This document shows, one piece after another, positions 1 through 34,026 of a stretch of DNA of 64,000 nt (positions within the stretch are counted from its first letter, which is position 1; each line of letters starts with the position of its first letter). Made by a program: the position numbers and the translations under genes. The DNA is taken from assembly GCA_965112735.1 (NCBI GenBank), contig OZ218953.1, positions 5,146,001 through 5,210,000 of the forward strand. Direction: 5' to 3'. This DNA comes from Phaeosaccion multiseriatum (lineage: Eukaryota > Protista > Ochrophyta, other classes). The notes below the pieces were generated by a model that was not told the DNA's origin, ran no database searches, and saw nothing but the letters and a program-made list of their open reading frames with translations.

Positions 1-3000
1 CAGCAGTTGGTGGTTCAGTCGTCCGACTCTTCTTGCGTCGCCAACCCCAACCCCGGCAACTTCACCCTCACCATGGAGACGGCGAACGGGCGCAGCGAGA
101 CCACCGGACTCTTGGCGGTGGATGCTTCGGCCAGCGCGGTGGCAGAGGCTCTTTCCTCCCTCTCCAACTTAGGGGGTGGCGCCGTGCGTGTGACGAGGGC
201 CGACCACTCCTCCTATGCTGACTTCGACGCGACCGGCGTCATGACCAACGAGCTGAAGCTAGCCTACCTGCTTCACTTCGACCATGTCCAGGAGGACCTG
301 GTGGAGGTCGTTCCCACGGTCTCAGGATGTGCCGACGTGAGTGTGACAGAGGTAGTGGCCGGCAAGGGCAGCGAGGAAGCCGCCCTGCTCCGAGTCATCC
401 CCGGCCCTCGCCCCGCCACTGCGCCCGGGAACATCTCTCTCACCATCATCAGCCCCTCTGAGCTTGGGGTGACTTGGGAGGCGCCCGCCTACGGCAACTG
501 GGGCTACGGTTTCGCTAAGTACTTTGTCCAGTGGGACAAGGCGTACACCTTCGATAGAAGTGTGGTGGTGGACGGAGGGAATGTCACCTACTCCAAGGCT
601 GGTCGCTTCTCTGCAGTGACGAGCGACTTGAGCTACCAAATCTCGGGCCTGGAGGAAGGGACGGAGTACTTTGTCCGCGTGTCTGCCTTCAACGGCAACT
701 CTTCTTCCTCCTCCTCATCCTCATCCTTCAACGTTACCTCCTTGGGCTACGGCAATGCGCTGGCCTCCGTGCCGTCCACTGCCATCCCCTCGGCACAGGT
801 GCCTTACAAGCCGAACATGGTGACGATGCGCCTCAGCGAGCCTGCCTTTGTGCACCCGGACAGCCCTGGAGATATCCCTGACCAACTCGACATCTCTTGG
901 AGCCGGCCTACACTTGATAGTGCGACGCAGCTCTTTGACACGACGGATGGTGGGGACACAATTTCCCACTACCGCTTGGAGTGGTCCGAGAGAAGCGACT
1001 TTGCGGCACAGAACGGGAGCTTCGATGTACGGGCGGTGACGAGCAACGGCACGGCCGCAAGCTGCCATGTGAGCAACTGCAGCTTCCCGCTAGGCGCGGA
1101 GGTGCAATCACTAAGTGTGTACAGTGGAGATAGCTTTGCCCTTGCGGGAGGAGCTTATCGATTGACGTATACCAATTCGGCTCTCAGCGTTTCGGAGGAG
1201 ACGGAGTGCCTGAACTACAACGCCGAGTACAGCGATGTTCGATCGGCGCTGGAGGGCATCACCAACAGCACGGTGCTCGTGTCCAGGGAGGCCATCACCT
1301 CCCCGGGCCTAGGCTACAAGTACCTGCTCACCTTCGTCGGCGGCGCGGTGCGAGGCAATGTTGAGCAAGTGTCCGTCTCGGATATCGGCGGCAGCGGCAG
1401 TTGGTCATCCAACAGCAGCAGCAACAGCAGCAGTTGGTCATACAGCACATGCTCCTCCTGGAGCGTGCAGTCCAGTACCAACGTCACGTCCAACACCACC
1501 AGCCAACAGGTGGTCACCGAGACTGCCATTGATGGAGGATTCCTCAACCCCGGGACAGAATACTTCGTCCGAGCCTCGGCCATCAACTCTGTAGGCGTTG
1601 GGGAGGCAGAGGCCGCTGTCGGAGATGCGGTGGACTGCGCGGACGGGGACTCGGAAACCTGTGCCCCTCGCAGCCCCCCCGGGGAGGCGCAAAACGTGCT
1701 TGTGTATGCCCACCCCGACGACGGAGACGCTCTCCTTGTGACTTGGGAGGACGTGGACACGGACAATGGAGGCGAGGTGACGGGCTTCATCGTGGAGTAC
1801 GCTTCGGAAGACGAGGTGCTTGCCAGTTGGGCCACCTTCGGAAATGAAACCGTCGGGGCTGCACGTCGATCGGCGACCATCTACCCGTCTGCCAACATGT
1901 CCACAAGCGCTACTTGTGGTATAGAGTACACCGTTCGAGTACGTGCTGTGAACGATCAAGGACTGAGCCCTCCCTCCTGGTACGGAGAGGTGGGGTACGA
2001 GGGCTTCACTGTCGCCGTTGCCACGTGCCCGCTGGGGATTGAAGACTGCGACGAGGGGAGCAACAGCACCACGATTGTACCCCGCCGTGTGCCTCGACAG
2101 CCCGACCTTGATGTGCCCATGTCCATCTCTACGCTCAGCACCAACAGTTTCACTTCTTCTTCCCTGCTCGTCACGTTCGGCGCCAATTCGGCGGACGTCA
2201 ACGGTAGCAGCAACAGCTCCTACGCCATTTGTGGTGCCAACCGAGTGGGAACCTTCAAGGTTGAGTGGGACACCTCTCCGTCCTTTAACAGCCTCGGCAA
2301 CAAACCCCTGAGCTACAACGCCACCACGGAAACCAGTCCAGAGGTCCTGGTCTCTGCCGACGAGACGGAGGCAAGCTACAACATCACCGGGCTCACTCAA
2401 GGCACTACTTACTACATCCGAGTAACGGGCAAGAACACGCTTGGCTATGGAGCGTCCTCGGACTACCAAGACGCTACCCCTATGACCTCCAGTGATCCTC
2501 CCAGCTACCCTACCACTCTTCGGCAGCTGGACGAGCAGGACTACGACACCGCCTTCCGCGGACGCAGCCTGGAGGTGGCATGGACGGCGCCCAAGGCCAA
2601 CGCGGATTACAATGACTACCACGGGCAGGGCGGCAGTGCGGTCTCCGCCTATCTGTTGGAGTGGGGTGCGCAGAGCTTCGACAACTACAACCACACCGTC
2701 ATGACGCTCGAGCTCAGCTGCTCCGGGGGAGGCACTCCGGAAGGCGTTTACAGACTGTCGCACGATACCACCAACTCGTCCCTGTCGCCTGTGGAAGGCG
2801 CGTTCCTCTCCACGGAGATCCGAGTGGAGGCGGAGTCTTGGGAGCTGCTCACGGCGCTGGAGAACGTTCCCAGCATCGGTACAGTGGACGTGACTCGCAA
2901 CCTCACTGGCACTGGAAACTTTACCTACGAGATTGAGTTCACCAGCGAGGTGGGCAGCGTGCCCCCCCTGGAGGTGTACGATGTTTCCGCTCTGTCGTGC

Positions 3001-24000: not shown

Positions 24001-27000
24001 GTGAGAGAGGCGGGTACGGAGGTACAGACCATCATTGTGCAAGACTCAGGCGACAGCGTGTGGGCCAACGGGGACCCTCAATACCGCCTTACATGGGGAA
24101 GCGGAAACACCACCGACTGCCTGGACTGGGATGCACTCGATTGGGAGGTGGAGGAGGCGCTGGAGACTGTGGGTCTGGAGGGACTGACGGTGACGCGTCG
24201 GGAAGACTCCACCTTCGCCCCCAACGGTTACATCTACTCCATCTACTTCTCCAGCGAGGCGTACGACGCTTCCGATGTGGCCGACCCGTACACCCTCAGC
24301 GATGGGGACGGAGGAGGAGGGCTGAATGTGAGCTATGCTGGCTGCAGTGCTGCCTTTGAGGCGGACTCGGGGGAGACGGTGACCTTGGCCACTGTGGTGC
24401 AGGGCAGCAGCGATGGAGGCATCTTTACGGATGAGTGGGTACCCCTTGCCGAGACGAGCGACAGTACCGTCTCGGCGCGATTCCTGGGAGGAGACGGGAC
24501 CAAAGCCCTTTCTATCTACCGTGTGACGGGTCATCTCTACACCGTGAGCTTCGACAGCAACCTCGGAGATGTGGATGCATTGGTGCCTGGGGTGGAGTCA
24601 CTGAGTGGTACCGATGCGGCAGTGACGGTGTTCGAAGAGGAGCTGCTGGAAGGCTACCTGCCCACAGGGTTCGTGGCGGAGGGCTTGCAAACGGGTCTAC
24701 CCTACCATCTGCGCGTGTCGGTGGCCAACAGCCTGGGCTACGCGGAGTACAGTAGTGATACAGTCGTCGCCAAGGCAGCTTCCGCCCCTTCTGCACCCGG
24801 CTCGCTGGAGGTGGAAGAGGCGTTACACGAGGACGAGGTGCAAGCGATTACGGTGGCGGCGACCCATATCGACGAGGTGCAGGTGATTCGCACCTCCGCG
24901 CCGTACATTACGGATGTCCAGCTCGTGACCACCAGCGCCGAGGAAGACGAGCTCGTGCGAGGGTCCTTTGCGCTCAACTTCCCGGAGGTTCAGCGCGTAA
25001 CGGTCGGCGCTTCTGCCATGTTCGACAATGGCAGTTACGCACTTGTCTACACCAAGCACGTGTTGAGCGGCAACGCCCTGACGCCCACCAACGAGACCTC
25101 CGTGTGCCTGGCCTGGGACGCTACTGCAGCGGACGTGGAGAGTGCGCTGGAAGACCTGACCTACATTGATGATGTGGCGGTGGTACGCAGCGGCGACGCG
25201 TCAGACAGCTCCGACTACGGCTACCACTACGACATTAGCTTCATCGGACTGGAGGTGGTGGGCAACGTTGAAATGCTCTCCGTGAGCAACGACTCTTCCC
25301 TGTGCACTGGCCTCAGCGCTGTGGGCGGAGGGTCGACTTTCGTCCGCGTGGTACAGACCAGCGCTGCCGGAGGAGCCGTTGGTACTGCCACCGCTGTTCA
25401 GCGTGTGAGCCTCTCTTCGGAGGTGGAGCTCACCAGTGGCGTGGGCGCCTACCGACTGGCGCTGACGTTGTCCAACTCGTCGACGGAGGTGGCGCTAGAG
25501 ACGTCTTGCATCGCGTGGGACGCTGAGGCAGGGGACATGGAGGAGGCATTGGAGGGGCTTGCCGTGGTGGACAGCGTACACGTTACGCGCGAGGACAAGG
25601 CTTCTTCTTCTGATTCCGATTCCGATTCTGCTTCTTTGGGTTCGGGCTACACGTGGAGTATCTTCTTTGACGGAAACGCCATGTACGACTCTGACATGGA
25701 CGTGGCGATGGAGGCCAACCTCACAGCGTGCAGCGAGTTTAGCACCACCATTGACGAGGTGCTCACCCCCATCACGGACAACAGCACCTACTCCTACTCC
25801 TTCTCTGTGTCTCTCTTGCAGAGTGGAGGGCTAGATTTGGATTACAACGCCCCTGCTTCAGACCTGACCGAGCAACTGGGCCTGCTGCCTGGCGTGGAGT
25901 CACCACTCATCATCTACGAGGGTGCACCGGACGAGCAGGAGGGACAGTCGTGGACCATGTCTTTCGGTGGCAACGACGGAGATGTGCCCCAGATGGTGTG
26001 TCTATCAGACACATCCTCCTCGGGCGACTTTGTCGGGGAGTGCGAGGTGGTTACTTTGGTGGAGGGCAACGAAATCGGAGGCTTCTTCTACCTCAACGAC
26101 ACGGATGGCATCGCCAGCGACGCCTCTGCCTCCGACATGGCCGCCGCCCTCGAGGCTTCCGGCTTGGGCGAGGTGAGTGTGAGCAGAGAGACCACGGACG
26201 CACGTGGAGGCTACGCCTGGAGCATCACCTTCTTCGACTATGAGGGAGACGTGCCCGCGCTCGCAGCGGACTCGGATATGAGTGGTTTCGACGTCGAGAT
26301 TACCACGAGTGAGGCGGTCAAGGGGAACGCTCTTGGGGGAACCTTTTCGATGGCACTCAACGGTTACGTAACGGGCGACTTGGCGAGCGACATTAGCGCG
26401 GAGGACCTCCAAACGGCACTGGAGGGACTCGATACAGTGGGTATGGTGGATGTGGAGCGGAGCGCGCTCTCGAGCGAGGGTGGCAGCACTTACCTTGTTA
26501 CCTTCCGCGACACCATCAACCCCGGGGATGTTACGGCCTTGGAGGCAGACTACAGTGAGACACTGACCGGAGAGGGCGCGGTGGTGCTGGTGAGAGAGGT
26601 GATCAAGGGAAGTGAGGCAGTGGGGACCATGGCCAAGCTCAGCTTCGAGGCTCCTAAGCAATGCTCCACCACCAAGGTGGAGCTTGGCGACTGCGGAGAG
26701 CCAGTGGAGTACTACCTCGTGGAGTGGGACACGAGCGATACCTTCAGTTCAGCGGCGCTGCGCTCACAGGTACTCAACGACACGGATCTTCTCTACCGCG
26801 TGCAGCGTGTCACCACCACGGCAGACAGCGTCATGTCGGGCACCTTCCAACTCAGTCTGGGCGGTCAGACCACGCAGAGCATCAATGCCAATGCCTCCAG
26901 CGAGGAGTTGCGAGTGGCTTTGGAGGCCCTTCCCTCGGTCATTACCACCCTGGACGTGAGCAGAGACTACTCCATGTACATTTGGGAAGGACACCTCGTA

Positions 27001-30000
27001 CGCGTGACGTATGGTGGGCAGTCCATTGAGCTCTACGGCAACGCTACGGACAATGCCCTTGCGGCCTGTGAGTTGATTCGCTTGGATGACGAATGGTACC
27101 GGGTCGACGATTCGTACGACAGTGAGTCCAGCACCGTGAGTCTGGCCCAGGTGCACGACTGCAGCGTGGCCAAGAGCTACGAAGGGTCATCGGGTACCGC
27201 GGTGGTGGAACGGTGGGCAAACGGTTACGAATGGAGCGTCACCTTTGCGTCCGCCGCGGAGCCCTTGCAGCTGCTGCAGAGCCCCATGCCCAAACTCTAC
27301 CCGGAGGACAGCAGCGTGTTGTACATTCGGGGCGCCAACTGTGACGGCTGCTTCTACCTCCCGGATCTGACCATGGGAGAGACGTACTACGTTCGCACGC
27401 AGGCCTACAATGAGTTCGGTGGAAGCCCCCTGGGGACCGCCAGCTCTGGCGACGGCGTGATGGAGGTGGTGCCCAACCAGGTGCCCTTCGCTCCTGAGGA
27501 TGTGAGCGTTACGGTGGTGAGCGGTAGCAAGCTAGAGGCGTTCTTCTGCGAGCCTCTCATCTCTTCCGACGACGTTTGGGGCTTCCGCGTCCAGTGGGAC
27601 GATGTGAGCTCCTTCGCCAACGCCACCTACAACGACGATGCGGGTTGTACGAGCGTGGGCTACGGTAGCTGTGTGGTGTCGGGTAGCGCGATTGCGGGCG
27701 AGTGCCCCTACTCGCTTGTTCTCTCGGACCTAACGGAGGATCAATTGTACTACGTGCGCGTGTCGGCGTTGGGTGAGGTAGATGCGCAAGCGGTGAGTCC
27801 CACAGGCGATCCGATCGACAACACAAATTGGAGCGGCACCATCGAGGCCACTCCTACGGATCAGCCTCCGAGCGCTCCTGGCACCATCTACCTCTATGTG
27901 CTGGACGGAAGCACACTCCAGGTACAACTGGCGGCGTCGACGGAGAGCGGAGGCAGCAATATTACGAGTTATGTGTTTGAGGTCGACACGGTGTCGACTT
28001 TCTCATCCGGGAGCCTAATGCAGACAGAAGTGGCCGCAGAGGATTTGTCGGAGCTGTACCTTGGCGGCGACTTGGTGTACAACATTGGTAACCTCACAGC
28101 TGGCGTATACTACTATGTGCAAGTCTCGGCTCAGAGTTCCATTGGAGGCAGCGATGCCACTCCGGCCTACAACAACCCAGTGGCGCCCACACAGCTCCCG
28201 GACCCGCCCACCAACGGAGAGGTGGAGGCAGTGGTGGTGGGTCTTGATGAGTTCAACACCGATCTGAGCGTTACATGGGCTGCCCCGGAGGACAATGGGG
28301 GCTCTCCGACGACGGGCTACCGAGTCGAGTGGTGGGAGAGGGACACGTACCGCGAGGAGGTGCAGATTGTGCGAATGACGTGGGACGACAACGACGAGCC
28401 GTCCAGTACCTTCCGTCTGTACTTTGACGGAGTGAGTACCAATGTCGGGCTGGATGCGGATGTCAGTGAGGTGAATCTACGCGACGCCCTCATGAACATC
28501 AACTCCAACACCACCTTCCCGATTGGCCATGTAACCGTCAACCGAAGCACCATCAACGGCGACGAGGGCTACGTCCACACCATTACGTTCAAGGATCAGG
28601 TCTCCAACCCCGGAGACCAGCCACCCATCCTGGCGGCGGACACTTTCGAAGGTTCAGCGAGCATGCGAGTGTACGAGTTGTACAGCGGTATCCGCGCAGG
28701 AGGAGCTCCTGAGATTCAAATCATTCGCTCCTCTGGCAGCGGCACGGGACTGCGCAACGCGTCCGATGTGGACGATGCGGTGGTCAAGGGGTTCTGGAGG
28801 GTTCAGTTTGCGGCCAGCAACTTTAGCACCTATGTGAGTGCCAGTGCGACGGCCGAGGAGGTGGAGGCCATGTGCCAGGGCCTGTCCACCATGGGGGACG
28901 TGGATGTGTCGCGGGAAACCAACGACGAGAATGGCTTCGACTGGGCCATCACCTTCACCTCACCCGTGGGAGATCGCGGAGGGATCGAGGTGGACGACGC
29001 CTTCCTGTGGACGTCCAACGACGATGCGGCCATTGTCGTCTACGATGGTGACAACGAAATCTCGTCCACGGATGGCAGCTTGGTGTGCAGCGGGTGCCAG
29101 GTGGGAGAGACGCCCATGGGCTACAACTACGCTGACCTGTCGGCAGATGAGCTTGCCTACACTATCACCGGGCTGACCACCGGCGTAGTGTATGAGGTGA
29201 TGGTGTCTGCAATGAACAAACACGGTCAAGGGGAACGCCTCTCGGCCAGCGGCGGCATTGAGCCACCCCTCGCCGTGCCGAGCGCCCCCACCAATGTGAC
29301 AGTGGATGTGAAGCCTTACAACGAGACGGTTGGCGACGGCATTGGCGACAGTCAGCGCCTGTTGGTGAGCTACGGAGCTCCGTTGTCCGACGGCGGCTCT
29401 GCGGTTACGTCGTACCTGGTGGAGCTGGACCCCACACCGACGTTCGACGACCCCATCAGTGAGGTGTTTGAGTGCCCCAACGCACCCGCCTACGCCACTT
29501 GGGTCATTGAGACGAACACCAACGCCACCATCACGGGGGGATACTTTGAGCTGGAGCTCACCAAGGGAGGCTTTGCGCTAGTGACCGATCTCATCCCTTA
29601 CAATGCCAAGTCATTGGCGGAGCAGGAGACTCCGGACCAGATTAGCACGGCGAGTGGCGTCATGTGCGAGAACGACGCCGGGGACAACGACGACGTGTGC
29701 CCTGACGACAGACGGGAGGCGAGCGGCTCTCTCCAGTCCAAGCTCAATGTGCTGGACACGCTGGACGATGGCGTGTTGGTTTCGCGCCAAGGGTTGGGCA
29801 GTGGGCAGTACCGCTGGACGGTCACCTTCCTCGACGTTGGCGACGACTTTGAGTTTGAGAGCACCACCACGCGCAACTACCTCAACACTACGGTGGGGGG
29901 GCAGACTTCCGTCACCGCCACCAAGATTCAGACCGGAGTGGACTATGGAGAGTGTAGTGGTGACATGATCATGCCCACGGAGGGCGGCCTGGTCAAGGGA

Positions 30001-31134
30001 CAGAACTACTACGCGAGGGTGTTTGCCTACAATGCCATTGGCTTCAGCAGCGGCCAGTCGGCCCCAGACCCTGCCAAACCGGCCACCACGCCGGGGCGAC
30101 CCACCTCGGTCTCTCTGGAGGTGTATGACGCAACCAGTCTGCAGGTGGTCTTCTCACCGCCCACGGACGACGGAGGAGATACCATCACCACGTACATGGT
30201 GGAGTGGGCAACGTCTGCTTCGTTCAGCGACTCGGAGACAGACAGCAGTCTGGTGACCATTCTCAGCGGCGGGGCGCCCTTCTACAAGGTGATTACGGGA
30301 CTCACAACTGGCACTCCGTACTACGTGCGCGTGTCGGCGATGAACAGCGTGGGCTACGGAGCGACGCAGAGCTCGAGCCCAAGCTTCCAGCACCCGTACC
30401 AGGAGCCTTCCGCCCCCACGGACGTTACGTTGGGCGTTACATCAGACACCATGCTCACGGTGAGCTTCTTCCCCCCCGAGAGCGAGGGAGGAGACGATAT
30501 CAGCACGTACCTGGTCGAGTGGGACGTCTCGAGCACGTTCAACACACTCACGGGATCGCCGCATCAGGGCAGCGCCCGCGTCAACGCTACCGAAGAGGCC
30601 TACACCATTCAGTACCTCTCCACAAGCACACGCTACTTTGTGCGGGTGAGCGCCGAGAACAACGCGGGAACGGGTGTGGCACGAGTCTCCAGCCCGAGCT
30701 CGGCCTTCCCCAGCCAGCAGGCGCCGGGCAAAGCGGTGGGAGTGTCGCTGACCAATGGAACGAGCAGCGGAGACATGATTGTGACCTGGGACTTCCCCAT
30801 CATTCCCAACCACGGAATGCCTTGCTACGGAACAGTGGACAACCCAACGGTTTGCCCGACCCCCATTGGCGGGGTGTATGCAGGCAGCGACGGAGGGGAC
30901 GACATTTACGAGTACCGTCTGCAGTGGGCCACCACGGATGACTTTGCCACTTCGGATTCGTCCCTCGGCTACGTGGACACCTCCAACACCACCTACACGG
31001 TGTCGAGCCTCACAACTGGACTGGAGTACTACTTCCGCGTGGCAGCAAGGAACACCATTGGGTATGCGGAGTTCTGTGAGGAGACGGGCAACACGTGTGC
31101 GGACGGCACGCAGATTAGCTCTGTCATGGGATGA
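1..31134 (+). CDS. Giant (>10,375 aa, 5'-truncated) FN3 / 'EVQ'-repeat extracellular protein (titin-like only by size and FN3 content)
   Basis: Frame +1 is open from base 1 to TGA at 31132-31134. About 25 FN3 C-terminal signatures (L.pGt.Y.vRV.A.N..G) with matching N-halves (V.W..P..dGG..V..Y.VEWD). About 45 repeats of EVQ.v....gG.F.L...g..T..i.ydA.a..v..aLe.L..vg.V.V.r....w.vtF....Gd...l. About 15-18 repeats of DL...l..GD.i.v. Visibly D/E/S/T/G-rich and K/R-poor, with many N-x-S/T sequons and scattered Cys. The listed TTG start at 7 is not a real start. Confidence 0.93.
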   Translation, partial: QQLVVQSSDSSCVANPNPGNFTLTMETANGRSETTGLLAVDASASAVAEALSSLSNLGGGAVRVTRADHSSYADFDATGVMTNELKLAYLLHFDHVQEDLVEVVPTVSGCADVSVTEVVAGKGSEEAALLRVIPGPRPATAPGNISLTIISPSELGVTWEAPAYGNWGYGFAKYFVQWDKAYTFDRSVVVDGGNVTYSKAGRFSAVTSDLSYQISGLEEGTEYFVRVSAFNGNSSSSSSSSSFNVTSLGYGNALASVPSTAIPSAQVPYKPNMVTMRLSEPAFVHPDSPGDIPDQLDISWSRPTLDSATQLFDTTDGGDTISHYRLEWSERSDFAAQNGSFDVRAVTSNGTAASCHVSNCSFPLGAEVQSLSVYSGDSFALAGGAYRLTYTNSALSVSEETECLNYNAEYSDVRSALEGITNSTVLVSREAITSPGLGYKYLLTFVGGAVRGNVEQVSVSDIGGSGSWSSNSSSNSSSWSYSTCSSWSVQSSTNVTSNTTSQQVVTETAIDGGFLNPGTEYFVRASAINSVGVGEAEAAVGDAVDCADGDSETCAPRSPPGEAQNVLVYAHPDDGDALLVTWEDVDTDNGGEVTGFIVEYASEDEVLASWATFGNETVGAARRSATIYPSANMSTSATCGIEYTVRVRAVNDQGLSPPSWYGEVGYEGFTVAVATCPLGIEDCDEGSNSTTIVPRRVPRQPDLDVPMSISTLSTNSFTSSSLLVTFGANSADVNGSSNSSYAICGANRVGTFKVEWDTSPSFNSLGNKPLSYNATTETSPEVLVSADETEASYNITGLTQGTTYYIRVTGKNTLGYGASSDYQDATPMTSSDPPSYPTTLRQLDEQDYDTAFRGRSLEVAWTAPKANADYNDYHGQGGSAVSAYLLEWGAQSFDNYNHTVMTLELSCSGGGTPEGVYRLSHDTTNSSLSPVEGAFLSTEIRVEAESWELLTALENVPSIGTVDVTRNLTGTGNFTYEIEFTSEVGSVPPLEVYDVSALSCSDGSNASVTVDTWPGALPNGSAYDSVIIPVEASDGSDFTHVITDLVPGTVYYARVSAYNTLGFGARRLAQPSGDSATSTGGMRVPFQVPDAPISPYYSAGLPSLALEGPSSLRVAFGAPEYDGGDRITKFQVEWDTSPSFDVAASTAAVDATTTLCSACVTGFSLDDLTLSVNGTDLFGKLNSGNRILVGSYYVFTVSDNVQLDATTIMVESSGHNALTDLEGPMKLELYSNEYTITDLTAGSLYFVRVFAKNQMKGWSAASFTSPLTMVPHGAPAAPTQLSVGLAGPYALNVTWASALTAGDVVRTYLVEVYTASLTTSQSGSIFGQAEVQTVAVLGNGGTFTLAFGEDDVALPGTVSVANGNDYLTSTEDLTAVLRRGDRISVGGYAYVVHAYATYNSTHLPLAKAPTNAVTVPTDLGTVELSEGFEGFTASNLTAYRVATTPAIAYDATADDVERVLETLSSVGDVDVSRDKITAGGYVWSVTFASSTAVSAGDQPLLVGNGRLLGNGTSDSNNYITVTESLVGIEPDNYLAYTLDAPQTSLLVDGLQTGTEYYVRVSAASDVGYGASSVSGPHAPKGVPGTLGAVQLSRVDMNHVEIEYDQDAPDNGAAVESVLVEWDVSSSFDSDNKRSLTVTPNHLLQAVRTNLWESGWTPSSAFSLSLFDFRGAFTQRLGGMDADGLYTYVSVEEGGSNLTRVTPNVTLGMGSAELFHGVARGGFVSVGGQEFSICLDGEAAYSATELSLCDADDPWQQAYYNATTSKYDNSQTQIPAYVLDTAAGSVLGVTLGDSSLSLYGYDGNLNSTANNLTSVLSRGDYIKLGHPEMGRTFRLCTDVSASNLTLGLCDPNTNGDSDTPVSVLEGDVMRSTYEIQAVTIGASVASNAVNASFGFRLEWGDYVSGETEAGGDAGCLLYGASASALETELEALAAIDDVSVTLTNTSDASFTNLTYSITFTGDKVAGGVPLVLVSDMGTNGCDGDNSTAVTSSVTAQYSYTPVYKVQTTQDIPYDASAADVKAALEGLTGVCSVDVDRGVNGNGFQWLVTFASSDSESESEYQQQQMLRAMRANGVQLDAMATYVEPDVSVVGVGRDLLYTNMSGVPYYVRASALNSVGLGPSKASSPISLQPAPQLPSAVRRSSVSVVSDSEVRVEWEPPQQDGGAEVTEYLLEWDTSKTFDSGSDGNPRGSAVVYAEDSEEVMDVQTLRFSVDGDAYVAGSFSLVFAGQTTGEIAYDATAETVEDELNALCTVGEVFVTRNLGPASGGHSWMVTFANMAYTGSQQNPTTSALQTSYGHKLSAVGDHLLVCDSAARENCVGDGARTSLVVESKQEVQRLRCETSASEFSISYMGQSTANITTSSGYSVTAIEDALEALSNLGDVTVELSNGASALTCTGEYIIVTFSTALGDVPPLSSSQDGDFEQVVQGSAQTTVGRMPYSYLIDSVSSASSPWYVRVAAFSSIGYGEWQLASQDDRTSVSPSQAAPQMALDVSAAVASESTVWVSWSQPESTGGDDVDYFVVQWDTLDTFDSTCGDGPEVQTLTIASEDLLDASNAFNISVNGLEIASCMAWNSSASTLEAAFQDASSALGLVTVTQGGDGSSVWSYGVSYSVTFNYNSTDEALPDWPEMVVAQCEGGAGSMNLTVTTVADGTTGASSDCQAGSLTAFGQAKVTEADALAMAAAMAADGDTTATDYAYMMTGLDPRDSYHVRVAAVNGYGQGSFKRAEEAVVPYATPTPPRNTTASALTTGGVRVDFALPEDYRVEGSNGATVEGYRVSLFSRVNEVQTVSLYGKPSSGSYQLSMGNASTWCIDASASADDVALALAVLPLVDGVTVSSGSSSSSNSSSNSSSSSSTDYTVTFDGPDLCNGDMPELGASVCATLGGGDVSSSYYYVDVTTVTEGVAGAVRPVVTVSITASSSSSSVSGFFVLSYGYDSAPLSLALGGEDSAASGGVLVYVAAGSKVVYSTADLSHYLNAGDSVSIDGVPVVVAGDFFCDNEGVTNGDDYPCTFTLESYHPSGASDILIYGAANSLGQGDVAEGDTSVLTNWDLTSLVQAGEGVVVYDPTDGSVMEVSVDSLSSSELTLASAYTGGDNVRVSLMAKNRVLLAADATAAEMADALYEGWGMAVDVSRVGPAADGSLVWEVTFTDHSGPLTAPFSVDVSGSTARYVEASCSGSGGAGFSGTYAATGGMYGGRAEYTALSLPYSMLFNDTTSSWAIVSTDNVAVASGNPTASMVPANISDCTLTTGASSGGALLTLLEGGDVSVEVTQTGTAPILTSPVRSLLSKSGGAEVQVISLTADADSLDGTFEVDFGGAGGFEADWDMSAADMELRLEELPTVGDVTVTRTPASAVNATAHGFSWFVTFSSMPGNVNQLYVDGNSTAVPLAGSGVELTVTELIRGQELTFSAEFEGVPEATYHAHVATYSSAGEGEATLVKPLTVSAKRTVPAPIIKSVTALSASQLEVAYDHHVDSGETATTDLVLEWTTDDDFGDGVMKKVMVTNTAGSNDTEGFFRLQLGGRYTHKLLFDASAADVQEALEELSTVGEVEVQRLVDQAGDGYTWVIAFPDAVGPMPKAGYGCLDCVVSTNGSMSSNSNDSTFALDMDLTDVIYVGDRFTLEYVSDGNSSSNSSWSYSSSGSSDLDTEDGCYLRVEEVSANSITYTPRPGCNASVDFANATMAIKFSDPLGLSVESVNLRSVSDDGVLSTFVVEELAGAYPAVYGTLPLSAEEDCGDIVVTDSAPLQRLTLAANDSVVTAGSYRLELDGLLTDCLAYNATPAEVEAALAGLPNVDQVSVSGRIFLENGAYYPVSEANKITDLFGYDMLIRFWGSYQGSASAWPLLRVPPAWFGVDNGDALACEAFEGGNAHSASVVGILSKGACVEGNTASQVILAEAESDLGGSFSLLYKGDVLSLDAVPLDSTAAEMEALLADAINATVTEYAYGTYGKAWEVTFDDSMGGPQDRLAPCDRFTTGDNSVVGVFESVTITTSADVHSRDDLSGHFRLRLGHEVTDKIAVGASNGRVAEALHKLSGVGKVILATPLKAVGAVPIGSVVAVNGSSQVSAAGDLSKSVSPGDVWIFSEEASTPAYYSVSDLVYDNSTNSSTLVTLNRTVLLDGNYSAEVGEVAMATKALPGSLFMESPVSLMYSFPASEDEAASIQLSSGGVSALNLTLNSSITLEGAVYTVMDYASDTVTLDRDYEGTAVSNGDVSIKVYLPEMTAYYTQDLSAWISAGDTLWVENGSGDVDEVTVVSMGADSGWNTSSLVLSGVFTSDYPSGTTAFVSSNGYTYHLVFKEAMSADLTGLQVEVEDDFLGSGARVEVRRPAGVAARTVSLGSPPEVQTVALRASKIYWANVNAANNKTWTLSVWGEETEELVWGASAETVQMALEGLSAVEHVEVERSGDGESAEFFYGYIYTLHFWGVYASANLPELVVQEQMAGTVAVVDTVREGSAAGNTDHLSSLKQDTSYALRLRVKNGLASDIVTASTAAVGVVPSAPTALELGACHYGEDEVAVEWQPPFSDGGQQVDAYRLEWDSSPLFSDASADYGTDYLGVVHEVQEVVVNFRSGDSVTTRAGTWTLSWGGMQTAQLAWDISAEGLEYAIHGISGAVDIGHNPVAVTRVPYRNGYKFTVRFMAWRGNLALMEPDFTLLFGDDPSVTVVEAVAGQADIHPGDFTLEVQSVSIEANSKVNGSFTLSFEGRETELIAHDEGAESFKSKLEALSSIHCGDVERVLLDEDLETYAWRVSLAWLKDELVPGAGRLGLLVVENESGLSGNSVAVRVSEMIEGTNPLTYSITGLTAGETYYARVVAHNSRGFGEYGYTTSGVPRAQSEAPQNATLAIASGSSLLATWSPPASDGGSAVTGYRVEVSTAAGVSEVQMITTSAKKGVSEVQRLSVRADDNNLGGYFTIALEGYTTGNIAWNAGATGTDSVKEKLERLPAIGEVDVEQDYSRRAVSGLLVDVMEGANNATASNASTVLPSQVLAENDIIFVAGYRARVKGFSSDGTTVLFGSLSNYLTEDLFDEGDGAEGVIVEKWAYGYEYLITFTSYNGDPPLLEPSPSDGWAGTNPTLDVAQVSRGLQPISGTFRAAYEGEKTRPLPHDISAEALEAALEGLATVSDLSVTKVVNGYGFNWIVTFVGEPGDVEMLSVDGSGLTGPSASVSVSVGQVGELADGYAAVDVSASTQEYLLSDLILGTPYWVQIRAMNAEGLSPAVMTAPAKLAPMQAPGAPEDVELIVMSDSMLKAVWEAPTTDGGQAVTQYRVEWDVSADFANIATSGFYHEMRVPSSDVDGTATTGPFYYNIVLPASSSRFARYVRVKASNSYKWSDYAYSVPASASPTRRPPGVVQNPMLTVTSGVGLLVEWEAPSTELTVYGGDGGSSLEEYLVEWDTSAKFDSPARRAVVPQSQLSHLIGGRDLMTGEESTELEPGVTYYTRVSAYNSLGYSATAATEPLSATTEDQIPTAAAMLGASTVGAQSVMGMFDTPSRDGGETLTKYRLEWDTDEDFAHINGTSRSGGWADVPLVQEVASFALSSTVQQEEQWVIASVEVTNEKQTVRTQVTGVDEVQLIVTSADAVQPNVQTITTYASDFDEVQEIVLDADDVDEWQYVYSETEEVYEVQVLTVSATRVNEVQQLTVTLTGNTTDGGQDLIDAANAYVTVEFELDSTNMDWACVKTTETSDAVEAFNDTDGSYLRTALESLSNLDNVTVETAGWALVTNDGSTGEVEMVYNITFDGDCTRGNVPTGDFVVDTCSTATDPSGKLASVGCALSVITEGNEPSGSFYLTYHCEATRYEGVGNMTASSDVLSLLNSTATPMVGDTMRVNDLGLSELNTDWSYFLVESVEAISSTDFDVTVDSAWTGSDGAFLVQFGDFYSDPSSSYGVSSSCLTADPDFTNNPLDYKATAAELEEELQGLAQLNSTAGCLGVVRDDIPAGTLIDFGGASGAVEVIGYTYNLTFYCSNGNVPTMACNASGTSPLTATNADMDALTAPEGKQCQITQELDGAILNGTFELGMTWPIKQEGTPELLNYTTGDMDWRVSAADLATAMENVKDEDGNRVFGSVSVDRSVYWPNGDYKWSGQYVWSVTFDSRPGDVPEMLVNSSLSNNRGGATNVTVRTDRQGNEIDGGFGLTFCDTNDVCTSTNSSYFGAYLSEDEMRFEMSRAFFSMGSGWANVTDGAANITLTYNTTDNATTTIDAPVEVTYWMLLDGNYYLVDGVNGTQATLDSDVNVDADGLYDIEYGITAVSVSRAGPTQAMGYTWEITFNNKTVGGDQSTLTSESQSLTGTGVDLNIDEIQQGNQITGTFTLAYNGETTVEIPYDADAAAVESALNSLSSIYPSQVEVTRSAEATVDTQQQVLGYTWTVTFDSATWHDPTDHDSSESYIDGNWNGAAVDWESTWETTGEGRFSRAWGRNVGKLLAMECSSDGLGTTRLDGSEDCAVAIVEEGSNPLGGSFTISLDTRGHAVMSADALCTTGDIAHNAWASAAESDGDGTSLEEILEATDCVGDVEVSRYDVNLGGNNGGYAWLVTFVRDADSPCQQYDDDTGECNAPGDVPKFNSNLTDTSDLLGTSMRNADSTTDQGVVTLLDVSDGNVSAPGVASVHVMRVYDLAYAASDRFDNEPKFLLELGGNVSTTCLPWNVSATDLATALEEASPEYAAGVVVTRSIPPDDEIWGLPSTSAPNGYSWTIHYVGYEGPVPELSFQARDTGCTTNGTAADFVDFQRVDAVVKVNGTSSPLTCDSEGCVDGVVLRGNFTAWYIDGDDDTGAGCNNTYILPWNAETSEVEASIEACGNNSRQVDVSRTVLDKYGSVEWVVTFTQNPGETPPGAGDVDTMTVEQNLAGVGGYASQPTVTETLKGSTSLSGTYNLDYDSTDGDRQLSFEESAERIMRKLEEMSTVSEVHVEREEYPSNSTGGWGAMAVDAGTQGGYVWKVRFLSVPGTYGGETFPAGSGDVDALVPDSSLAGTGAAVVVETVTEGSDEMSGKFSLSLDGQTTELISYTADATAVEAVLEDLSNVGAVSVDFDYYTAERIPGVSVYVGRDASGATLEVSGTDRKLRNYLAAGTLLRLGGQDVESSGSLSGTNGETLLDEPGGVGHMVDVVSGSPLVTTDTELSDSVVAGMEVRLAGDVYSVRRTGVEVQKLTLLSGSGGGQYKLAFTHNGLLNATTECLDFDASAAVLDAALEALTNIGTDQVVVTRTGADTKGRPYTHSIYFEGSDVHGDVNELVATPCSGSEDVELSVQTVVQGGGVEVQRLTLATDAGYIVGEHFTLSLGGGAGGANYTNDTTGCLEWGMEATDLAAQLSALPSLSQWEVESLSLNLTELYLSPSATVPLSNGTFVQGRLSAGDVITVQGSKKEGATYTVDEVDEDGAFIVLTETLFASASASGEAKVTLQLLDAVQVQREGTGKSVVEVQTLSVTASSAISPLSDQDQDGLFRLSWTHDSESLLTECLPYGASAATVQAALNGFLLDLNNDGLVDEEDQDHIIVTREGDASAEYGYGYEYTFTFKGVAGISSVVGDVNELQVVDVGAANGCSDIGGMETEISGLTAVTSDLSSTIVPSSDASSILVPGDRIRISTSEDPFRVYTVERTVGSEAVYLTELFQKNMTDTDSNATITLVADGLPAFSMLTSANGQAAFTYDIMFVHPWLAGVDELVVGNEGEGECQSGDHTDSDADEWTFYAGMRRDVKVATLSEGGSDAILSLMLESSVEAGGVPADASFRLFVAYDGAYQRLLCGDWNTSAEDLEMAFESVLGVEPSSGQVMVEVEGYGNVSSNYGNTLRATLSGDLLAGDVDVQLLRSRYNADGDIVTDMPVIFSGLGEGDDVSFTANMSANASATVSDAVIVASYAEADSGSGNSTVLHYSINATMWAISDGSATEVNLSGNFTNTDTPFNVSLTADLGVEVVVTFNDADGLVIGDEYTLLLSSCGLTDPIPYGASVSLDLVAGSAQQKQLTLDRPYEGSESTSQEAYLVPQTFRVREAGTEVQTIIVQDSGDSVWANGDPQYRLTWGSGNTTDCLDWDALDWEVEEALETVGLEGLTVTRREDSTFAPNGYIYSIYFSSEAYDASDVADPYTLSDGDGGGGLNVSYAGCSAAFEADSGETVTLATVVQGSSDGGIFTDEWVPLAETSDSTVSARFLGGDGTKALSIYRVTGHLYTVSFDSNLGDVDALVPGVESLSGTDAAVTVFEEELLEGYLPTGFVAEGLQTGLPYHLRVSVANSLGYAEYSSDTVVAKAASAPSAPGSLEVEEALHEDEVQAITVAATHIDEVQVIRTSAPYITDVQLVTTSAEEDELVRGSFALNFPEVQRVTVGASAMFDNGSYALVYTKHVLSGNALTPTNETSVCLAWDATAADVESALEDLTYIDDVAVVRSGDASDSSDYGYHYDISFIGLEVVGNVEMLSVSNDSSLCTGLSAVGGGSTFVRVVQTSAAGGAVGTATAVQRVSLSSEVELTSGVGAYRLALTLSNSSTEVALETSCIAWDAEAGDMEEALEGLAVVDSVHVTREDKASSSDSDSDSASLGSGYTWSIFFDGNAMYDSDMDVAMEANLTACSEFSTTIDEVLTPITDNSTYSYSFSVSLLQSGGLDLDYNAPASDLTEQLGLLPGVESPLIIYEGAPDEQEGQSWTMSFGGNDGDVPQMVCLSDTSSSGDFVGECEVVTLVEGNEIGGFFYLNDTDGIASDASASDMAAALEASGLGEVSVSRETTDARGGYAWSITFFDYEGDVPALAADSDMSGFDVEITTSEAVKGNALGGTFSMALNGYVTGDLASDISAEDLQTALEGLDTVGMVDVERSALSSEGGSTYLVTFRDTINPGDVTALEADYSETLTGEGAVVLVREVIKGSEAVGTMAKLSFEAPKQCSTTKVELGDCGEPVEYYLVEWDTSDTFSSAALRSQVLNDTDLLYRVQRVTTTADSVMSGTFQLSLGGQTTQSINANASSEELRVALEALPSVITTLDVSRDYSMYIWEGHLVRVTYGGQSIELYGNATDNALAACELIRLDDEWYRVDDSYDSESSTVSLAQVHDCSVAKSYEGSSGTAVVERWANGYEWSVTFASAAEPLQLLQSPMPKLYPEDSSVLYIRGANCDGCFYLPDLTMGETYYVRTQAYNEFGGSPLGTASSGDGVMEVVPNQVPFAPEDVSVTVVSGSKLEAFFCEPLISSDDVWGFRVQWDDVSSFANATYNDDAGCTSVGYGSCVVSGSAIAGECPYSLVLSDLTEDQLYYVRVSALGEVDAQAVSPTGDPIDNTNWSGTIEATPTDQPPSAPGTIYLYVLDGSTLQVQLAASTESGGSNITSYVFEVDTVSTFSSGSLMQTEVAAEDLSELYLGGDLVYNIGNLTAGVYYYVQVSAQSSIGGSDATPAYNNPVAPTQLPDPPTNGEVEAVVVGLDEFNTDLSVTWAAPEDNGGSPTTGYRVEWWERDTYREEVQIVRMTWDDNDEPSSTFRLYFDGVSTNVGLDADVSEVNLRDALMNINSNTTFPIGHVTVNRSTINGDEGYVHTITFKDQVSNPGDQPPILAADTFEGSASMRVYELYSGIRAGGAPEIQIIRSSGSGTGLRNASDVDDAVVKGFWRVQFAASNFSTYVSASATAEEVEAMCQGLSTMGDVDVSRETNDENGFDWAITFTSPVGDRGGIEVDDAFLWTSNDDAAIVVYDGDNEISSTDGSLVCSGCQVGETPMGYNYADLSADELAYTITGLTTGVVYEVMVSAMNKHGQGERLSASGGIEPPLAVPSAPTNVTVDVKPYNETVGDGIGDSQRLLVSYGAPLSDGGSAVTSYLVELDPTPTFDDPISEVFECPNAPAYATWVIETNTNATITGGYFELELTKGGFALVTDLIPYNAKSLAEQETPDQISTASGVMCENDAGDNDDVCPDDRREASGSLQSKLNVLDTLDDGVLVSRQGLGSGQYRWTVTFLDVGDDFEFESTTTRNYLNTTVGGQTSVTATKIQTGVDYGECSGDMIMPTEGGLVKGQNYYARVFAYNAIGFSSGQSAPDPAKPATTPGRPTSVSLEVYDATSLQVVFSPPTDDGGDTITTYMVEWATSASFSDSETDSSLVTILSGGAPFYKVITGLTTGTPYYVRVSAMNSVGYGATQSSSPSFQHPYQEPSAPTDVTLGVTSDTMLTVSFFPPESEGGDDISTYLVEWDVSSTFNTLTGSPHQGSARVNATEEAYTIQYLSTSTRYFVRVSAENNAGTGVARVSSPSSAFPSQQAPGKAVGVSLTNGTSSGDMIVTWDFPIIPNHGMPCYGTVDNPTVCPTPIGGVYAGSDGGDDIYEYRLQWATTDDFATSDSSLGYVDTSNTTYTVSSLTTGLEYYFRVAARNTIGYAEFCEETGNTCADGTQISSVMG

Positions 31135-31169
31135 GTGACGGAGGAGTGAAGGGAGGAGGAGGGAAGGAG

Positions 31170-31210
31170 AGAGAGAGTGTGTATGTTAGAGTGGGAGAGA
31201 GATAAAAGAA

Positions 31211-31247
<37 letters not shown>

Positions 31248-31270
31248 ATATGTGTGAGTGAGAGAGAGAG
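31170..31270. repeat. (GA)n/(GT)n microsatellites just downstream of the giant ORF
   Basis: gagagagag and tgtgtgtgtg runs directly after the stop codon. Confidence 0.85.
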
Positions 31271-33030: not shown

Positions 33031-33070
<40 letters not shown>

Positions 33071-33627: not shown

Positions 33628-34026
33628 CAACTCCCGGCTTATATACTGTAGGTTTGTTTCTAGTTTGAAGGGGGGGGGGACGAGATTTCGCCGTGCAAGC
33701 GCACGGTGGCGGCAGTCTGGAGACTAAGGTGGATAGAACTCTCTACGTCTCGCTTGCTTGCTTGTACTTGCAATTGATGATGGAAGGAAAAAGCAATCAT
33801 TATATTACGGAAGGAAGCCATGAAGTGCCATCGCCAAACTGAAACGGAAACTGATTTTGCTCTCGAGCCCCACACGCTTTCAAGGCGCTTTCTCTCGTCT
33901 TTTGCGCAGCAAGGAGGAGGTGGGGCTCCCATAATGCCCTCCCCACTCTCTCTCGAGGGAGCAGAGGAGGGAAAAGCGAATACGAGAAGCAGCAGCAGCA
34001 GCAGTGGTAGCAAAAGTAGGAGGGGC

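What the first reader, a model, noticed from the sequence alone, without database searches (positions are those of the whole stretch)
1..31134. A single 31-kb exon encoding >10,375 aa in a genome whose other genes are riddled with introns
Seen: no stop codon and no microsatellite intron in 31 kb, and the frame is still open at the window edge. Most neighbouring genes have short exons separated by repeat-filled introns. The repeats are highly diverged at protein level, so this is not a recent tandem amplification or collapsed assembly. Inference: a >1 MDa acidic, glycosylated, extracellular structural or adhesion protein (cell covering, hair or scaffold). The lack of introns could reflect selection on a giant transcript, retroposition or horizontal origin.
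Basis: partly seen in the sequence, partly recalled or inferred. Interest (0 to 1): 0.75.

Follow-up and report, generated by a model that had tools for sequence, protein, structure and literature searches.

The report
Giant 38-kb exon, secreted algal protein
The stop-free 31 kb is real and is part of a 38.4-kb last exon of a three-exon gene for a 17,429-residue secreted, sugar-binding-type protein found across stramenopiles; such huge exons are normal for this gene family but stand out in a genome whose other long genes carry about four introns per kilobase.

Summary
Observation confirmed and extended. The frame 1..31134 has no stop. It continues 7.2 kb upstream of the window, giving one exon of 38,379 nt (12,792 codons).

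Every stretch of 20 or more residues in that exon aligns to homologous proteins of other species. Coding periodicity never lapses and there are no microsatellites, so it hides no intron.

The gene is not intronless. Two short host-type introns (294 and 194 nt) lie further upstream. The first is in frame and stop-free, so an ORF scan cannot see it.

The full product is 17,429 aa (about 1.8 MDa, pI 4.05). It has a signal peptide and no membrane anchor. It holds about 39 FN3 domains, about 80 copies of a ~100-aa domain absent from Pfam and homologous to the CTE-like domains of mycobacteriophage Bxb1 virion proteins, three PA14 domains and filamin repeats.

Collinear orthologues occur in brown-alga relatives, raphidophytes, xanthophytes and oomycetes. 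Most environmental relatives also have 10-28 kb uninterrupted frames.

Retroposition and recent horizontal transfer are not supported. The giant exon is most simply an ancestral family trait that survived in an intron-dense genome.

The scan has noted this stretch before from other angles (domain nesting), and other giant genes in this genome.

The parts
1..31131 (+). In-window part (10,377 codons) of the terminal exon 3. The whole exon is G000:C4:5138756-5177134 (window -7244..31134): 38,379 nt, 12,792 codons plus the stop.
   Evidence: ORF. Upstream extension and splice acceptor. GC3 is 0.70-0.79 in every 1.5-kb window. No non-coding island at 240-nt resolution. 12,770 of 12,792 residues align to long homologue HSPs, with no unaligned run of 20 aa or more.
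31132..31134 (+). TGA stop, the true C-terminus of the protein.
   Evidence: The orthologue P0106 (Tribonema minus) ends within one residue of this stop, and P0093, P0165 and P0169 end within about nine residues. Downstream sequence shows no coding periodicity. The next + strand gene is an unrelated PPR protein.
421..720 (+). Example of a contiguous FN3 domain.
   Evidence: Pfam PF00041. Best stretch is aa 141-240 of window:1-15000; whole-piece E 5.5e-70.
14527..15705 (+). One FN3 domain interrupted after its first strands by two U (CTE-like) units. It begins with two stacked 'EVQ' strands.
   Evidence: My FN3 and U HMM half-matches flank each other here. Single-sequence AF2 of this piece failed at pLDDT 33, so the 3-D topology is not shown.
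26293..26607 (+). Reference copy of the ~100-aa U repeat (CTE-like domain), an alpha/beta unit.
   Evidence: First row of alignment A1. AF2 model pLDDT 85, pTM 0.79. VIA-align Z 12.0, 11.0 and 9.6 to Bxb1 gp23, the Bxb1 capsid protein C-terminus and Patience gp22. Profile against PDB sequences: E 2.5e-31 to Bxb1 gp23. No Pfam family.
30409..30696 (+). One of the four tandem C-terminal FN3 domains.
   Evidence: Pfam PF00041. Best stretch is aa 637-732 of window:28501-31131; E 2.9e-36.
31135..33819 (.). 3' flank (3' UTR and intergenic DNA). It is rich in microsatellites and shows no coding periodicity.
   Evidence: TRF rows for (TG)n, (GA)n and (CTG)n. GC3-GC2 is about 0 in all frames. No exon-like hydrophobic tail was seen.

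Best explanation
The window holds the last 31.1 kb of a 38,379-nt terminal exon of a three-exon nuclear gene on G000:C4.

Gene structure:
- Exon 1: 5124357-5132954.
- Intron 1: 294 nt.
- Exon 2: 5133249-5138561.
- Intron 2: 194 nt.
- Exon 3: 5138756-5177134.

The gene encodes a 17,429-aa, highly acidic, secreted modular protein. After the signal peptide comes a backbone of about 39 FN3 domains. Many of them are split by inserted arms of a ~100-aa alpha/beta domain homologous to the CTE-like domains of mycobacteriophage Bxb1 virion proteins (about 80 copies). There are also three PA14 lectin-type domains and filamin/Ig repeats, and no membrane anchor.

Shown:
- The gene structure.
- The absence of hidden introns in exon 3.
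- The domain content.
- Vertical, collinear conservation in ochrophyte algae and oomycetes.
- Very long uninterrupted frames as the rule in relatives.

Inferred:
- The protein works outside the cell as a long, glycosylated, glycan-binding scaffold or adhesive of the cell covering.
- The giant exon is an ancestral, intron-poor state of this family that persisted, probably through selection against interrupting it. Meanwhile the rest of this genome acquired about 4 introns per kb of coding sequence. Splicing by intron definition, with short introns, sets no upper limit on exon length.
For: Gene structure:
- ORF and chance.
- Upstream extension.
- Intron 2 has GTGAGT...CAG ends, is phase 0, and lies inside one U domain. 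HMM positions 9-32 end exon 2 and positions 34-94 start exon 3.
- Four orthologues bridge that junction with no indel, or a single residue of difference.
- Intron 1 was found as the only 20-aa-or-longer stretch that no homologue covers. It has GTAGGT...CAG ends and is CT-rich.
- The N-terminus is supported by the Thraustotheca 'secreted protein' P0018, which aligns from its residue 18.
- The C-terminus is shared with orthologues.

Protein:
- Signal peptide and lack of any other hydrophobic segment.
- Pfam FN3, PA14, GLEYA and filamin.
- PA14 matches the Clostridium RsgI3 PA14 domain at E 8e-42.
- U domain evidence.

Host origin and family pattern:
- Host-like codon use.
- Orthologue taxa.
- Ten metagenomic relatives have uninterrupted frames of 10-28 kb running into the conserved C-terminus or through the whole fetched stretch.
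- A paralogue on C8 has 9.8- and 18.2-kb open frames.
- Host intron density.
Against: There are no RNA or protein data for this organism, so transcription, splicing and secretion are all inferred. Expression of the family rests only on transcriptome-derived homologues (P0003 from MMETSP).

The function is inferred from domain types alone. The role of the phage CTE-like domain was not stated in the papers I could read.

Why introns are absent is not explained mechanistically. Other FN3-array genes in this genome tolerate many introns.

About 40% of the sequence is not covered by my FN3 and U HMMs, and a few 140-300-aa blocks have no assigned fold.

The homologue-coverage test could miss an intron shorter than about 60 nt.
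Confidence: 0.75

Rival explanations
1. Secondary, 3'-biased intron loss. The gene once carried many introns like its neighbours and lost them through recombination with a reverse-transcribed mRNA, leaving only 5' introns.
For: Both surviving introns lie in the first 27% of the coding sequence, and the 3' 73% has none. That is the classical signature of cDNA-mediated intron loss (established knowledge, from memory).
Against: The 5' 13.9 kb is also nearly intron-free: 2 introns against about 60 expected at the dynein density. Most environmental relatives and oomycete orthologues also have 10-28 kb uninterrupted frames, so the intron-poor state looks ancestral. A 38-kb cDNA tract would be extraordinary.
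Confidence: 0.15
2. Retroposed or horizontally acquired gene. It is intron-poor because it arrived recently as cDNA or from an intron-poor donor.
For: Extreme intron poverty in an intron-dense genome. Two of its domain types have their closest solved relatives in bacteria and phages.
Against: It contains two host-type introns, one inside a domain. No poly(A) follows the stop. GC3 and codon use match the neighbours. The best collinear orthologues are related ochrophyte algae at 44-53% identity, with oomycetes more distant, as expected for vertical descent. Paralogues exist in the same genome.
Confidence: 0.04
3. The 31 kb is not really one exon. It hides in-frame, stop-free introns like the one found upstream.
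For: Such an intron exists in this very gene: 294 nt, in frame, with no stop. Twenty-five GT[GA]AGT strings occur within exon 3.
Against: The same three tests that expose the upstream intron are negative across exon 3. First, there is no unaligned run of 20 aa or more against homologues. Second, only isolated low-periodicity windows occur, and all of them encode recognisable domains. Third, in the in-window 31 kb, no TRF row other than three with periods that are multiples of three and one 24-nt row of period 11. The upstream 7.2 kb of the exon was not scanned with TRF. The longest insertion relative to any orthologue is 20 aa.
Confidence: 0.04
4. Component of the stramenopile flagellar hairs (mastigonemes) rather than of the cell covering.
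For: The family occurs in both oomycetes and ochrophytes, and in the wall-less flagellate Heterosigma. These share flagellar hairs (my knowledge). The U profile gives a weak, nearly full-length match (E 0.31) to a chain named OCM6 in PDB entry 9ufe.
Against: The match is not significant. I could not confirm what OCM6 is. A 3,333-aa piece of this protein, L005 (most of exon 1 and part of exon 2), hits no 9ufe chain at E <= 0.001. The Phytophthora mastigoneme proteins named in the literature I read are EGF-domain proteins.
Confidence: 0.08

Closest known systems
Oomycete and algal orthologues annotated only as 'hypothetical', 'FN3 domain-containing', 'secreted protein' or 'similar to titin'. Examples: Aphanomyces astaci RHY82099.1, Albugo laibachii CCA13958.1, Thraustotheca clavata AIG55740.1, Tribonema minus KAG5186906.1 and KAG5186910.1, Phaeothamnion CAM9130727.1, Choristocarpus CAM9165015.1.
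   Same: Collinear domain order, 32-53% identity over thousands of residues, the same C-terminus in the algal orthologues and the same N-terminus in Thraustotheca, and very long uninterrupted frames.
   Different: All database entries are fragments or are shorter than 8,000 aa. None has been characterised. The oomycete hosts are intron-poor (my knowledge), so a giant exon is unremarkable there. Here the host is intron-dense.
Giant repeat-coding exons of animal structural and surface proteins (MUC16 ~21.7 kb, TTN ~17 kb; sizes from memory).
   Same: One huge exon encodes an array of extracellular or structural repeats, in a genome where genes normally have many introns.
   Different: This exon is longer (38.4 kb). 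It encodes folded, strongly diverged domains (28% identity) rather than low-complexity or near-identical repeats. The surrounding intron density is far higher.
CTE / CTE-like domains of mycobacteriophage Bxb1 virion proteins (gp23 'tail tip cage' in PDB 9d93; major capsid protein in 9d9w; tail tube gp19) and phage Patience gp22 (8giu).
   Same: The U repeat is homologous to them. The profile gives E 2.5e-31 to gp23. The structural match has Z 12.0, rmsd 2.5 A over 98 residues at 22% identity. gp23 also shows several N-terminal halves followed by C-terminal halves, the same stacked order seen here. The name 'CTE-like' comes from PMC13252515.
   Different: Those are one to three copies on a phage particle. 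Here there are about 80 copies in a eukaryotic secreted protein, inserted into FN3 loops. The biochemical role of the domain is not established in what I could read.
Bacterial giant adhesins and fungal PA14/GLEYA adhesins (RTX ice-binding adhesin type; yeast Flo/Epa; my knowledge).
   Same: A long acidic array of beta-sandwich 'extender' domains combined with PA14-type sugar-binding modules. This points to a surface-adhesion logic.
   Different: It has a eukaryotic signal peptide in place of type I secretion signals. No RTX repeats, GPI signal or wall anchor were found. The PA14 domains are internal, not terminal.

Membership tests
Fibronectin type III array proteins (Pfam PF00041) | Significant matches to the FN3 profile above the gathering score. 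| tested here: met
   E 5.5e-70, 7.6e-30, 2.9e-36 and 3.6e-53 on different pieces. My own HMM finds 54 hits, 39 of them with an N-terminal start.
PA14 / GLEYA carbohydrate-binding domain (PF07691, PF10528) | A profile match above cut-off, and similarity to solved PA14 domains. | tested here: met
   Three copies, at E 1.3e-22, 3.2e-10 and 4.6e-23, plus GLEYA at 2.7e-09. E 8.4e-42 to the RsgI3 PA14 domain, PDB 6qe7. Sugar binding itself was not tested.
Bxb1 CTE-like domain family | Sequence and fold homology to the solved phage domain. | tested here: met
   Profile E 2.5e-31. VIA-align Z 12.0, 11.0 and 9.6, well above the next matches at Z about 6. The AF2 model has pLDDT 85. The domain is absent from Pfam-A.
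Secreted protein (classical ER route) | An N-terminal signal peptide and no transmembrane segment or anchor. | tested here: met
   The N-terminus has a hydrophobic core followed by a small-residue cleavage motif. The maximum Kyte-Doolittle 19-residue mean is 2.58 at residue 9. The only other window above 2.0 lies in the translated intron 1, and none occurs in exon 3. No dedicated signal-peptide or GPI predictor was available.
Processed retrogene | No introns, a poly(A) remnant, and an intron-bearing parent copy. | tested here: not met
   Two spliceosomal introns are present. No poly(A) follows the stop. No closer parent copy exists in the genome; the paralogues are distinct genes.
Recent horizontal transfer | Deviant composition or codon use, and nearest relatives outside the host lineage. 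| tested here: not met
   GC3 is 0.74 against 0.72 in the neighbouring PPR gene and 0.57-0.66 in two other neighbouring ORFs; RSCU r = 0.77. The nearest relatives are ochrophyte algae.
Mucin-type giant exon | Pro/Thr/Ser-rich low-complexity tandem repeats. | tested here: not met
   The composition is S 11%, T 9% and P 3.8%, with folded FN3 and U domains throughout. Only four short tandem-repeat rows occur in 31 kb.
   Homologue coverage, periodicity and repeat tests are all negative. The upstream in-frame intron served as a positive control. Direct RNA evidence is not available.

The most novel reading that the evidence does not exclude
This genome, which looks like the alga reported to have undergone a lineage-specific burst of short C/T-rich intron gain, has a small class of giant secreted repeat-protein genes that the burst almost completely spared. 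This gene has 2 introns where about 220 would be expected. If so, these genes are a natural control for finding what directs or forbids intron gain: insertion bias of the intron-generating process, expression state, or selection that scales with transcript length. In addition, the conserved 17-kaa protein would be an undescribed core component of the stramenopile cell surface, built on a phage-like domain.
Probability: 0.3. Interest if true: 0.7.

Novelty: new variant of a known kind. Interest (0 to 1): 0.5.

Why it matters
A 38.4-kb coding exon is longer than the largest human exons I know of (from memory). It sits in a genome whose dynein genes have an intron roughly every 230 nt of coding sequence. 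The contrast is extreme and can be quantified.

The gene also shows that an open frame is not proof of an exon, because one of its introns is in frame and stop-free.

The protein belongs to a stramenopile-wide family of giant secreted proteins. Nobody has characterised this family, and databases hold it only as fragments.

Its main repeat is a domain missing from Pfam, although a profile finds it in about 15,600 cluster representatives. The only solved relatives of that repeat are on mycobacteriophage particles.

None of this is a new principle. Giant exons for giant repeat proteins are known, and relatives share the trait.

Tried and rejected
- **The look-up of encoding contigs:** Gene structures of the named orthologues (Tribonema, Choristocarpus, Phaeothamnion) could therefore not be read. 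I used protein length against contig length, and metagenomic loci, instead.
- **Single-sequence AF2 of the split FN3 with two U units:** pLDDT 33, uninformative. The nested 3-D topology proposed by other readers was therefore not tested here.
- **Foldseek against PDB:** only marginal E-values, best 1.7e-3. VIA-align and a sequence profile settled the homology.
- **Literature searches:** searches for the largest known exons, for this protein family and for OCM6 or mastigoneme structures found nothing usable. The Bxb1 structure paper itself is not in the library.
- **A further 3' exon carrying a membrane anchor:** rejected. Orthologues end within a few residues of this stop (P0106 within one), and the downstream 2.7 kb shows no coding signal.
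- **Assembly collapse or recent amplification:** rejected.
- **Spliced model:** the three exons were searched separately, by reference. The joined protein was not built or sent to any tool, and only its length was summed.
- **Organism identity:** it fits Chrysoparadoxa australica by intron style, but this was not proven.
Full report
**1. The observation**

The window is G000:C4:5146001-5210000, + strand, in a 67-Mb assembly of 22 contigs.
- The ORF listing reports a + strand ORF at 7..31134 of 10,375 aa.
- Reading from base 1 gives 10,377 codons and one terminal TGA.
- The other sense frames of the same DNA carry 319 and 383 stops per about 12,790 codons, so the chance probability of such a frame is about e^-356.
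- Tandem Repeats Finder lists four rows in 1..31134 and 112 rows in 31135..64000. Of the four, three have periods that are multiples of three and one is a 24-nt row of period 11.
- Internal protein repeats share a median of 28% identity, at most 51%.
- The gene has no DNA self-match of 100 nt or more.

The stretch is neither a collapsed assembly nor a young amplification.

**2. Extent of the exon and of the gene**

I fetched 40 kb upstream from the same contig.

*Intron 2.* The frame stays open to window -7301. There a pyrimidine tract and CAG acceptor (last base -7245) follow a (GT)n-rich stretch that begins with GTGAGT at -7438. This gives a 194-nt, phase-0 intron.

Upstream of it, a second frame is open for 4,867 codons. 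It begins with an ATG followed by a typical signal peptide.

*Evidence that these are one gene:*
- The intron lies inside a single copy of the main repeat. My HMM matches positions 9-32 at the end of the upstream exon and positions 34-94 at the start of the downstream one.
- Four homologues from other organisms (P0054, P0036, P0006, P0030) align to both flanks, with no residues missing or added at the junction, or a single residue of difference in P0036.

*Intron 1.* When aligning orthologues I found that Phaeothamnion and Tribonema proteins skip about 95 residues of the upstream frame. The DNA there is a 294-nt GTAGGT...CAG intron full of GA and CT runs. It happens to be in frame and free of stops.

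*Gene model:*

| Part | G000:C4 coordinates | Size |
|---|---|---|
| Exon 1 | 5124357-5132954 | 2,866 codons |
| Intron 1 | 5132955-5133248 | 294 nt |
| Exon 2 | 5133249-5138561 | 1,771 codons |
| Intron 2 | 5138562-5138755 | 194 nt |
| Exon 3 | 5138756-5177134 | 12,792 codons plus stop; 38,379 nt |

The product is 17,429 aa. I summed the lengths only. The joined protein was not built or submitted anywhere, and every search was done exon by exon, by reference.

*The two ends of the protein:*
- C-terminus: the Tribonema orthologue P0106 ends within one residue of this stop, and three Heterosigma-type proteins (P0093, P0165, P0169) end within about nine residues. The 2.7 kb downstream has no coding periodicity. 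The next gene is an unrelated PPR protein.
- N-terminus: the Thraustotheca 'secreted protein' aligns from its residue 18 to residue 32 here.

**3. Is exon 3 really free of introns?**

The in-frame intron upstream shows that an open frame proves nothing, so I applied three tests and used that intron as a positive control.
- *Homologue coverage.* I counted residues aligned in HSPs of at least 400 columns to the 164 homologous proteins then held. In exon 3, 12,770 of 12,792 residues are covered and no run of 20 or more is left uncovered. In the upstream frame the only such run is intron 1.
- *Coding periodicity (GC3 minus GC2 in 240-nt windows).* Five consecutive windows collapse over intron 1. 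In exon 3 only five windows of 636 are low, four of them isolated and two adjacent, and each encodes recognisable FN3 or repeat sequence.
- *Microsatellites.* They fill both introns and every neighbouring gene, but are absent from the in-window 31 kb of exon 3. The upstream 7.2 kb of the exon was not scanned with TRF.

The longest insertion relative to any orthologue is 20 aa. An intron of typical size for this genome (about 180-590 nt) is therefore excluded. Only RNA can give final proof.

**4. The genomic background**

- The 327-aa AAA_6 domain of dynein heavy chains is found in 88 separate pieces, spread over about 17 genes. That is roughly four introns per kb of coding sequence.
- At that density, exon 3 would carry about 160 introns and the whole gene about 220. 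It has two.
- Other FN3-array genes in the same genome are interrupted, with open frames of 143-1,527 aa. A repeat architecture alone therefore does not keep introns out.
- Very long exons are nevertheless not unique to this gene. A paralogue on contig 8 has open frames of 3,263 and 6,075 codons, and another on contig 14 has frames of 2,060 and 2,641.
- Earlier notes of this scan, which I did not check, describe a six-exon 1.24-MDa receptor gene and a fibre gene of about 200 repeat units in one frame.
- Giant exons thus seem to belong to a small class of giant secreted or surface repeat-protein genes.
- The introns here are short and C/T- or G/T-rich. [quoted passage not shown] This genome fits that description. 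I could not confirm its identity.

**5. What the protein is**

- *Known domains.* Pfam finds FN3 throughout, three PA14 domains (one also matching GLEYA) and filamin repeats. The first PA14 matches the PA14 domain of Clostridium RsgI3 at E 8e-42.
- *The unrecognised repeat.* About 80 further units of about 100 aa are not recognised by Pfam. An alignment of 35 copies (A1) gave a confident AF2 model (pLDDT 85, pTM 0.79): a small alpha/beta unit with one helix.
- *Solved relatives of that repeat.*
[quoted passage not shown] The next matches have Z about 6.
  - The sequence profile alone finds gp23 at E 2.5e-31.
  - A later paper calls these 'CTE-like domains' (PMC13252515).
- *Spread of the repeat.* The same profile finds about 15,600 cluster representatives among 1.84 billion proteins, many of them 2,000-7,800 aa long.
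- *Split FN3 domains.* About 18 of about 39 FN3 domains are split. An N-terminal half is followed by one or more of these units and then by the C-terminal half. In places several 'EVQ' first strands are stacked before an equal number of domain bodies. gp23 shows the same order, with three N-terminal halves and then C-terminal halves. Other readers of this scan called this bottle-brush or Russian-doll nesting. I could not test the 3-D topology, because the single-sequence fold failed.
- *Bulk properties.* The pI is 4.05 and the three exons together come to about 1.84 MDa. The two open frames as analysed, which still include the translated intron 1, hold 247 N-glycosylation sequons. There is no hydrophobic segment apart from the signal peptide and the translated intron.

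**6. Relatives**

*Collinear orthologous fragments that tile most of the length:*

| Organism | Protein | Region covered | Identity |
|---|---|---|---|
| Phaeothamnion | P0050 | residues 77-1345 of exon 1 | 53% |
| Phaeothamnion | P0036 | exon 1 residue 2304 to exon 3 residue 1823 | about 44% |
| Choristocarpus | P0020 | exon 3 residues 3604-8112 | 46% |
| Heterosigma type | P0169 | exon 3 residues 9231-12784 | 46% |
| Tribonema | P0054, P0106 | both sides of the exon 2/3 junction, and the C-terminus | 40-44% |

- Oomycete proteins from Aphanomyces and Thraustotheca align at about 31-37% identity. Phytophthora and Albugo proteins carry the same repeat but were not among the collinear alignments I examined.
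- The database names are 'hypothetical', 'FN3 domain-containing', 'secreted protein' and 'similar to titin'.
- One homologue is an MMETSP transcript of 7,479 aa, so at least one member of the family is expressed as a very long mRNA.
- Several models fill their contigs almost entirely. Examples are 4,264 aa on 13.6 kb in Phaeothamnion, 3,908 aa on 12.0 kb in Phytophthora and 7,447 aa on 23.5 kb in a Logan assembly.
- Among 51 metagenomic loci fetched with an alignment of C-terminal orthologues (A2), ten have uninterrupted frames of 10-28 kb that reach the conserved C-terminus or run through the whole fetched stretch. Seven, including six of the best-matching loci, show one to three breaks.
- Huge exons are therefore the family norm, and a few lineages have added a few introns.

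**7. Explanation and rivals**

*Most likely reading.* This is a vertically inherited, ancestrally intron-poor gene for a secreted, glycosylated, glycan-binding scaffold or adhesive of the stramenopile cell surface. It kept its giant exon while the host genome filled with short introns.

*Rivals rejected or weakened:*
- Retroposition and recent horizontal transfer are contradicted by the two host-type introns, host-like codon use, the taxonomy of the orthologues and the presence of paralogues.
- Secondary 3'-biased intron loss fits the 5' position of both introns. It is weakened by the intron poverty of the 5' part and by the uninterrupted frames in relatives.

*Lead not settled.* A flagellar-hair role is a speculative lead. 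It rests on the taxonomic spread and on a non-significant match to a PDB chain named OCM6.

*Open question.* The sequence does not say why this gene class escapes introns. Selection against error-prone splicing of a 52-kb message, or a bias of the intron-generating process, are the candidates.

**8. Verdict**

It is wrong about intronlessness of the gene, retroposition and horizontal origin.
- The case is a striking and well-defined example of a known phenomenon (giant exons for giant repeat proteins) in an unusually intron-dense host. It involves an uncharacterised, widely conserved protein family built on a phage-like domain.

Noticed in passing
G000:C4:5132955-5133248 (window -13045..-12752, upstream of the window; in locus L005): A 294-nt GT...AG intron that is in frame and contains no stop codon. 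Its GA/CT-rich sequence simply reads through, so ORF scans merge two exons into a 4,867-codon frame. It sits inside a filamin repeat just after the first PA14 domain. It was detected only because orthologues skip it and coding periodicity collapses there.
   Followed up: yes
window 26293-26607 and about 80 other copies; alignment A1: The main ~100-aa repeat has no Pfam family, yet a profile finds about 15,600 cluster representatives. It is homologous to the CTE-like domains of mycobacteriophage Bxb1 (gp23, capsid and tail-tube C-termini). In gp23 the profile matches three N-terminal halves and then C-terminal halves, the same stacked order as in this protein.
   Followed up: partly
PDB entry 9ufe, chain FA 'OCM6': There is a weak but nearly full-length match of the repeat profile (E 0.31, profile positions 9-93) to a 723-aa chain called OCM6. 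If OCM stands for an Ochromonas mastigoneme protein, the domain may occur in stramenopile flagellar hairs. I found no paper to confirm this.
   Followed up: partly
G000:C8:688247-715793 (loci L008-L011): A paralogous giant gene carries the same repeat and has open frames of 3,263 and 6,075 codons (9.8 and 18.2 kb). Another lies at C14:1888310-1900844, with frames of 2,060, 1,152 and 2,641 codons.
   Followed up: partly
about 17 dynein heavy-chain loci, e.g. G000:C3:790961-794239 and C7:3324698-3328410: The 327-aa AAA_6 domain is split into up to nine exon pieces per gene, with gaps of about 180-590 nt. That is about four introns per kb of coding sequence, an unusually high density.
   Followed up: partly
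window 33820-37393 (+): The neighbouring PPR-repeat gene is read from two overlapping open frames. An (ACAT)n microsatellite at 35508-35647 lies in the overlap and is probably its intron.
   Followed up: no
L005 aa 2138-2274 (exon 1, G000:C4 about 5132414-5132824): The first PA14 domain is unusually close (E 8.4e-42) to the PA14 domain of the Clostridium anti-sigma factor RsgI3 (PDB 6qe7).
   Followed up: no
metagenome loci L013 (GC 0.68), L017, L021, L022, L049, L053, L058: Some environmental relatives of the C-terminal 2,277 aa are broken into two to four frames, whereas most are uninterrupted. These may be lineages that gained a few introns, or they may hold frameshift errors.
   Followed up: no
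exon 3 residues 4077-4290, 5317-5497, 6024-6165, 6464-6769, 9975-10142 and 10246-10428 (window about 4985-24040): Blocks of 140-300 aa are matched by neither my FN3 nor my repeat HMM, nor by Pfam. They are conserved in orthologues, so they are probably further unrecognised domains or very diverged copies.
   Followed up: no
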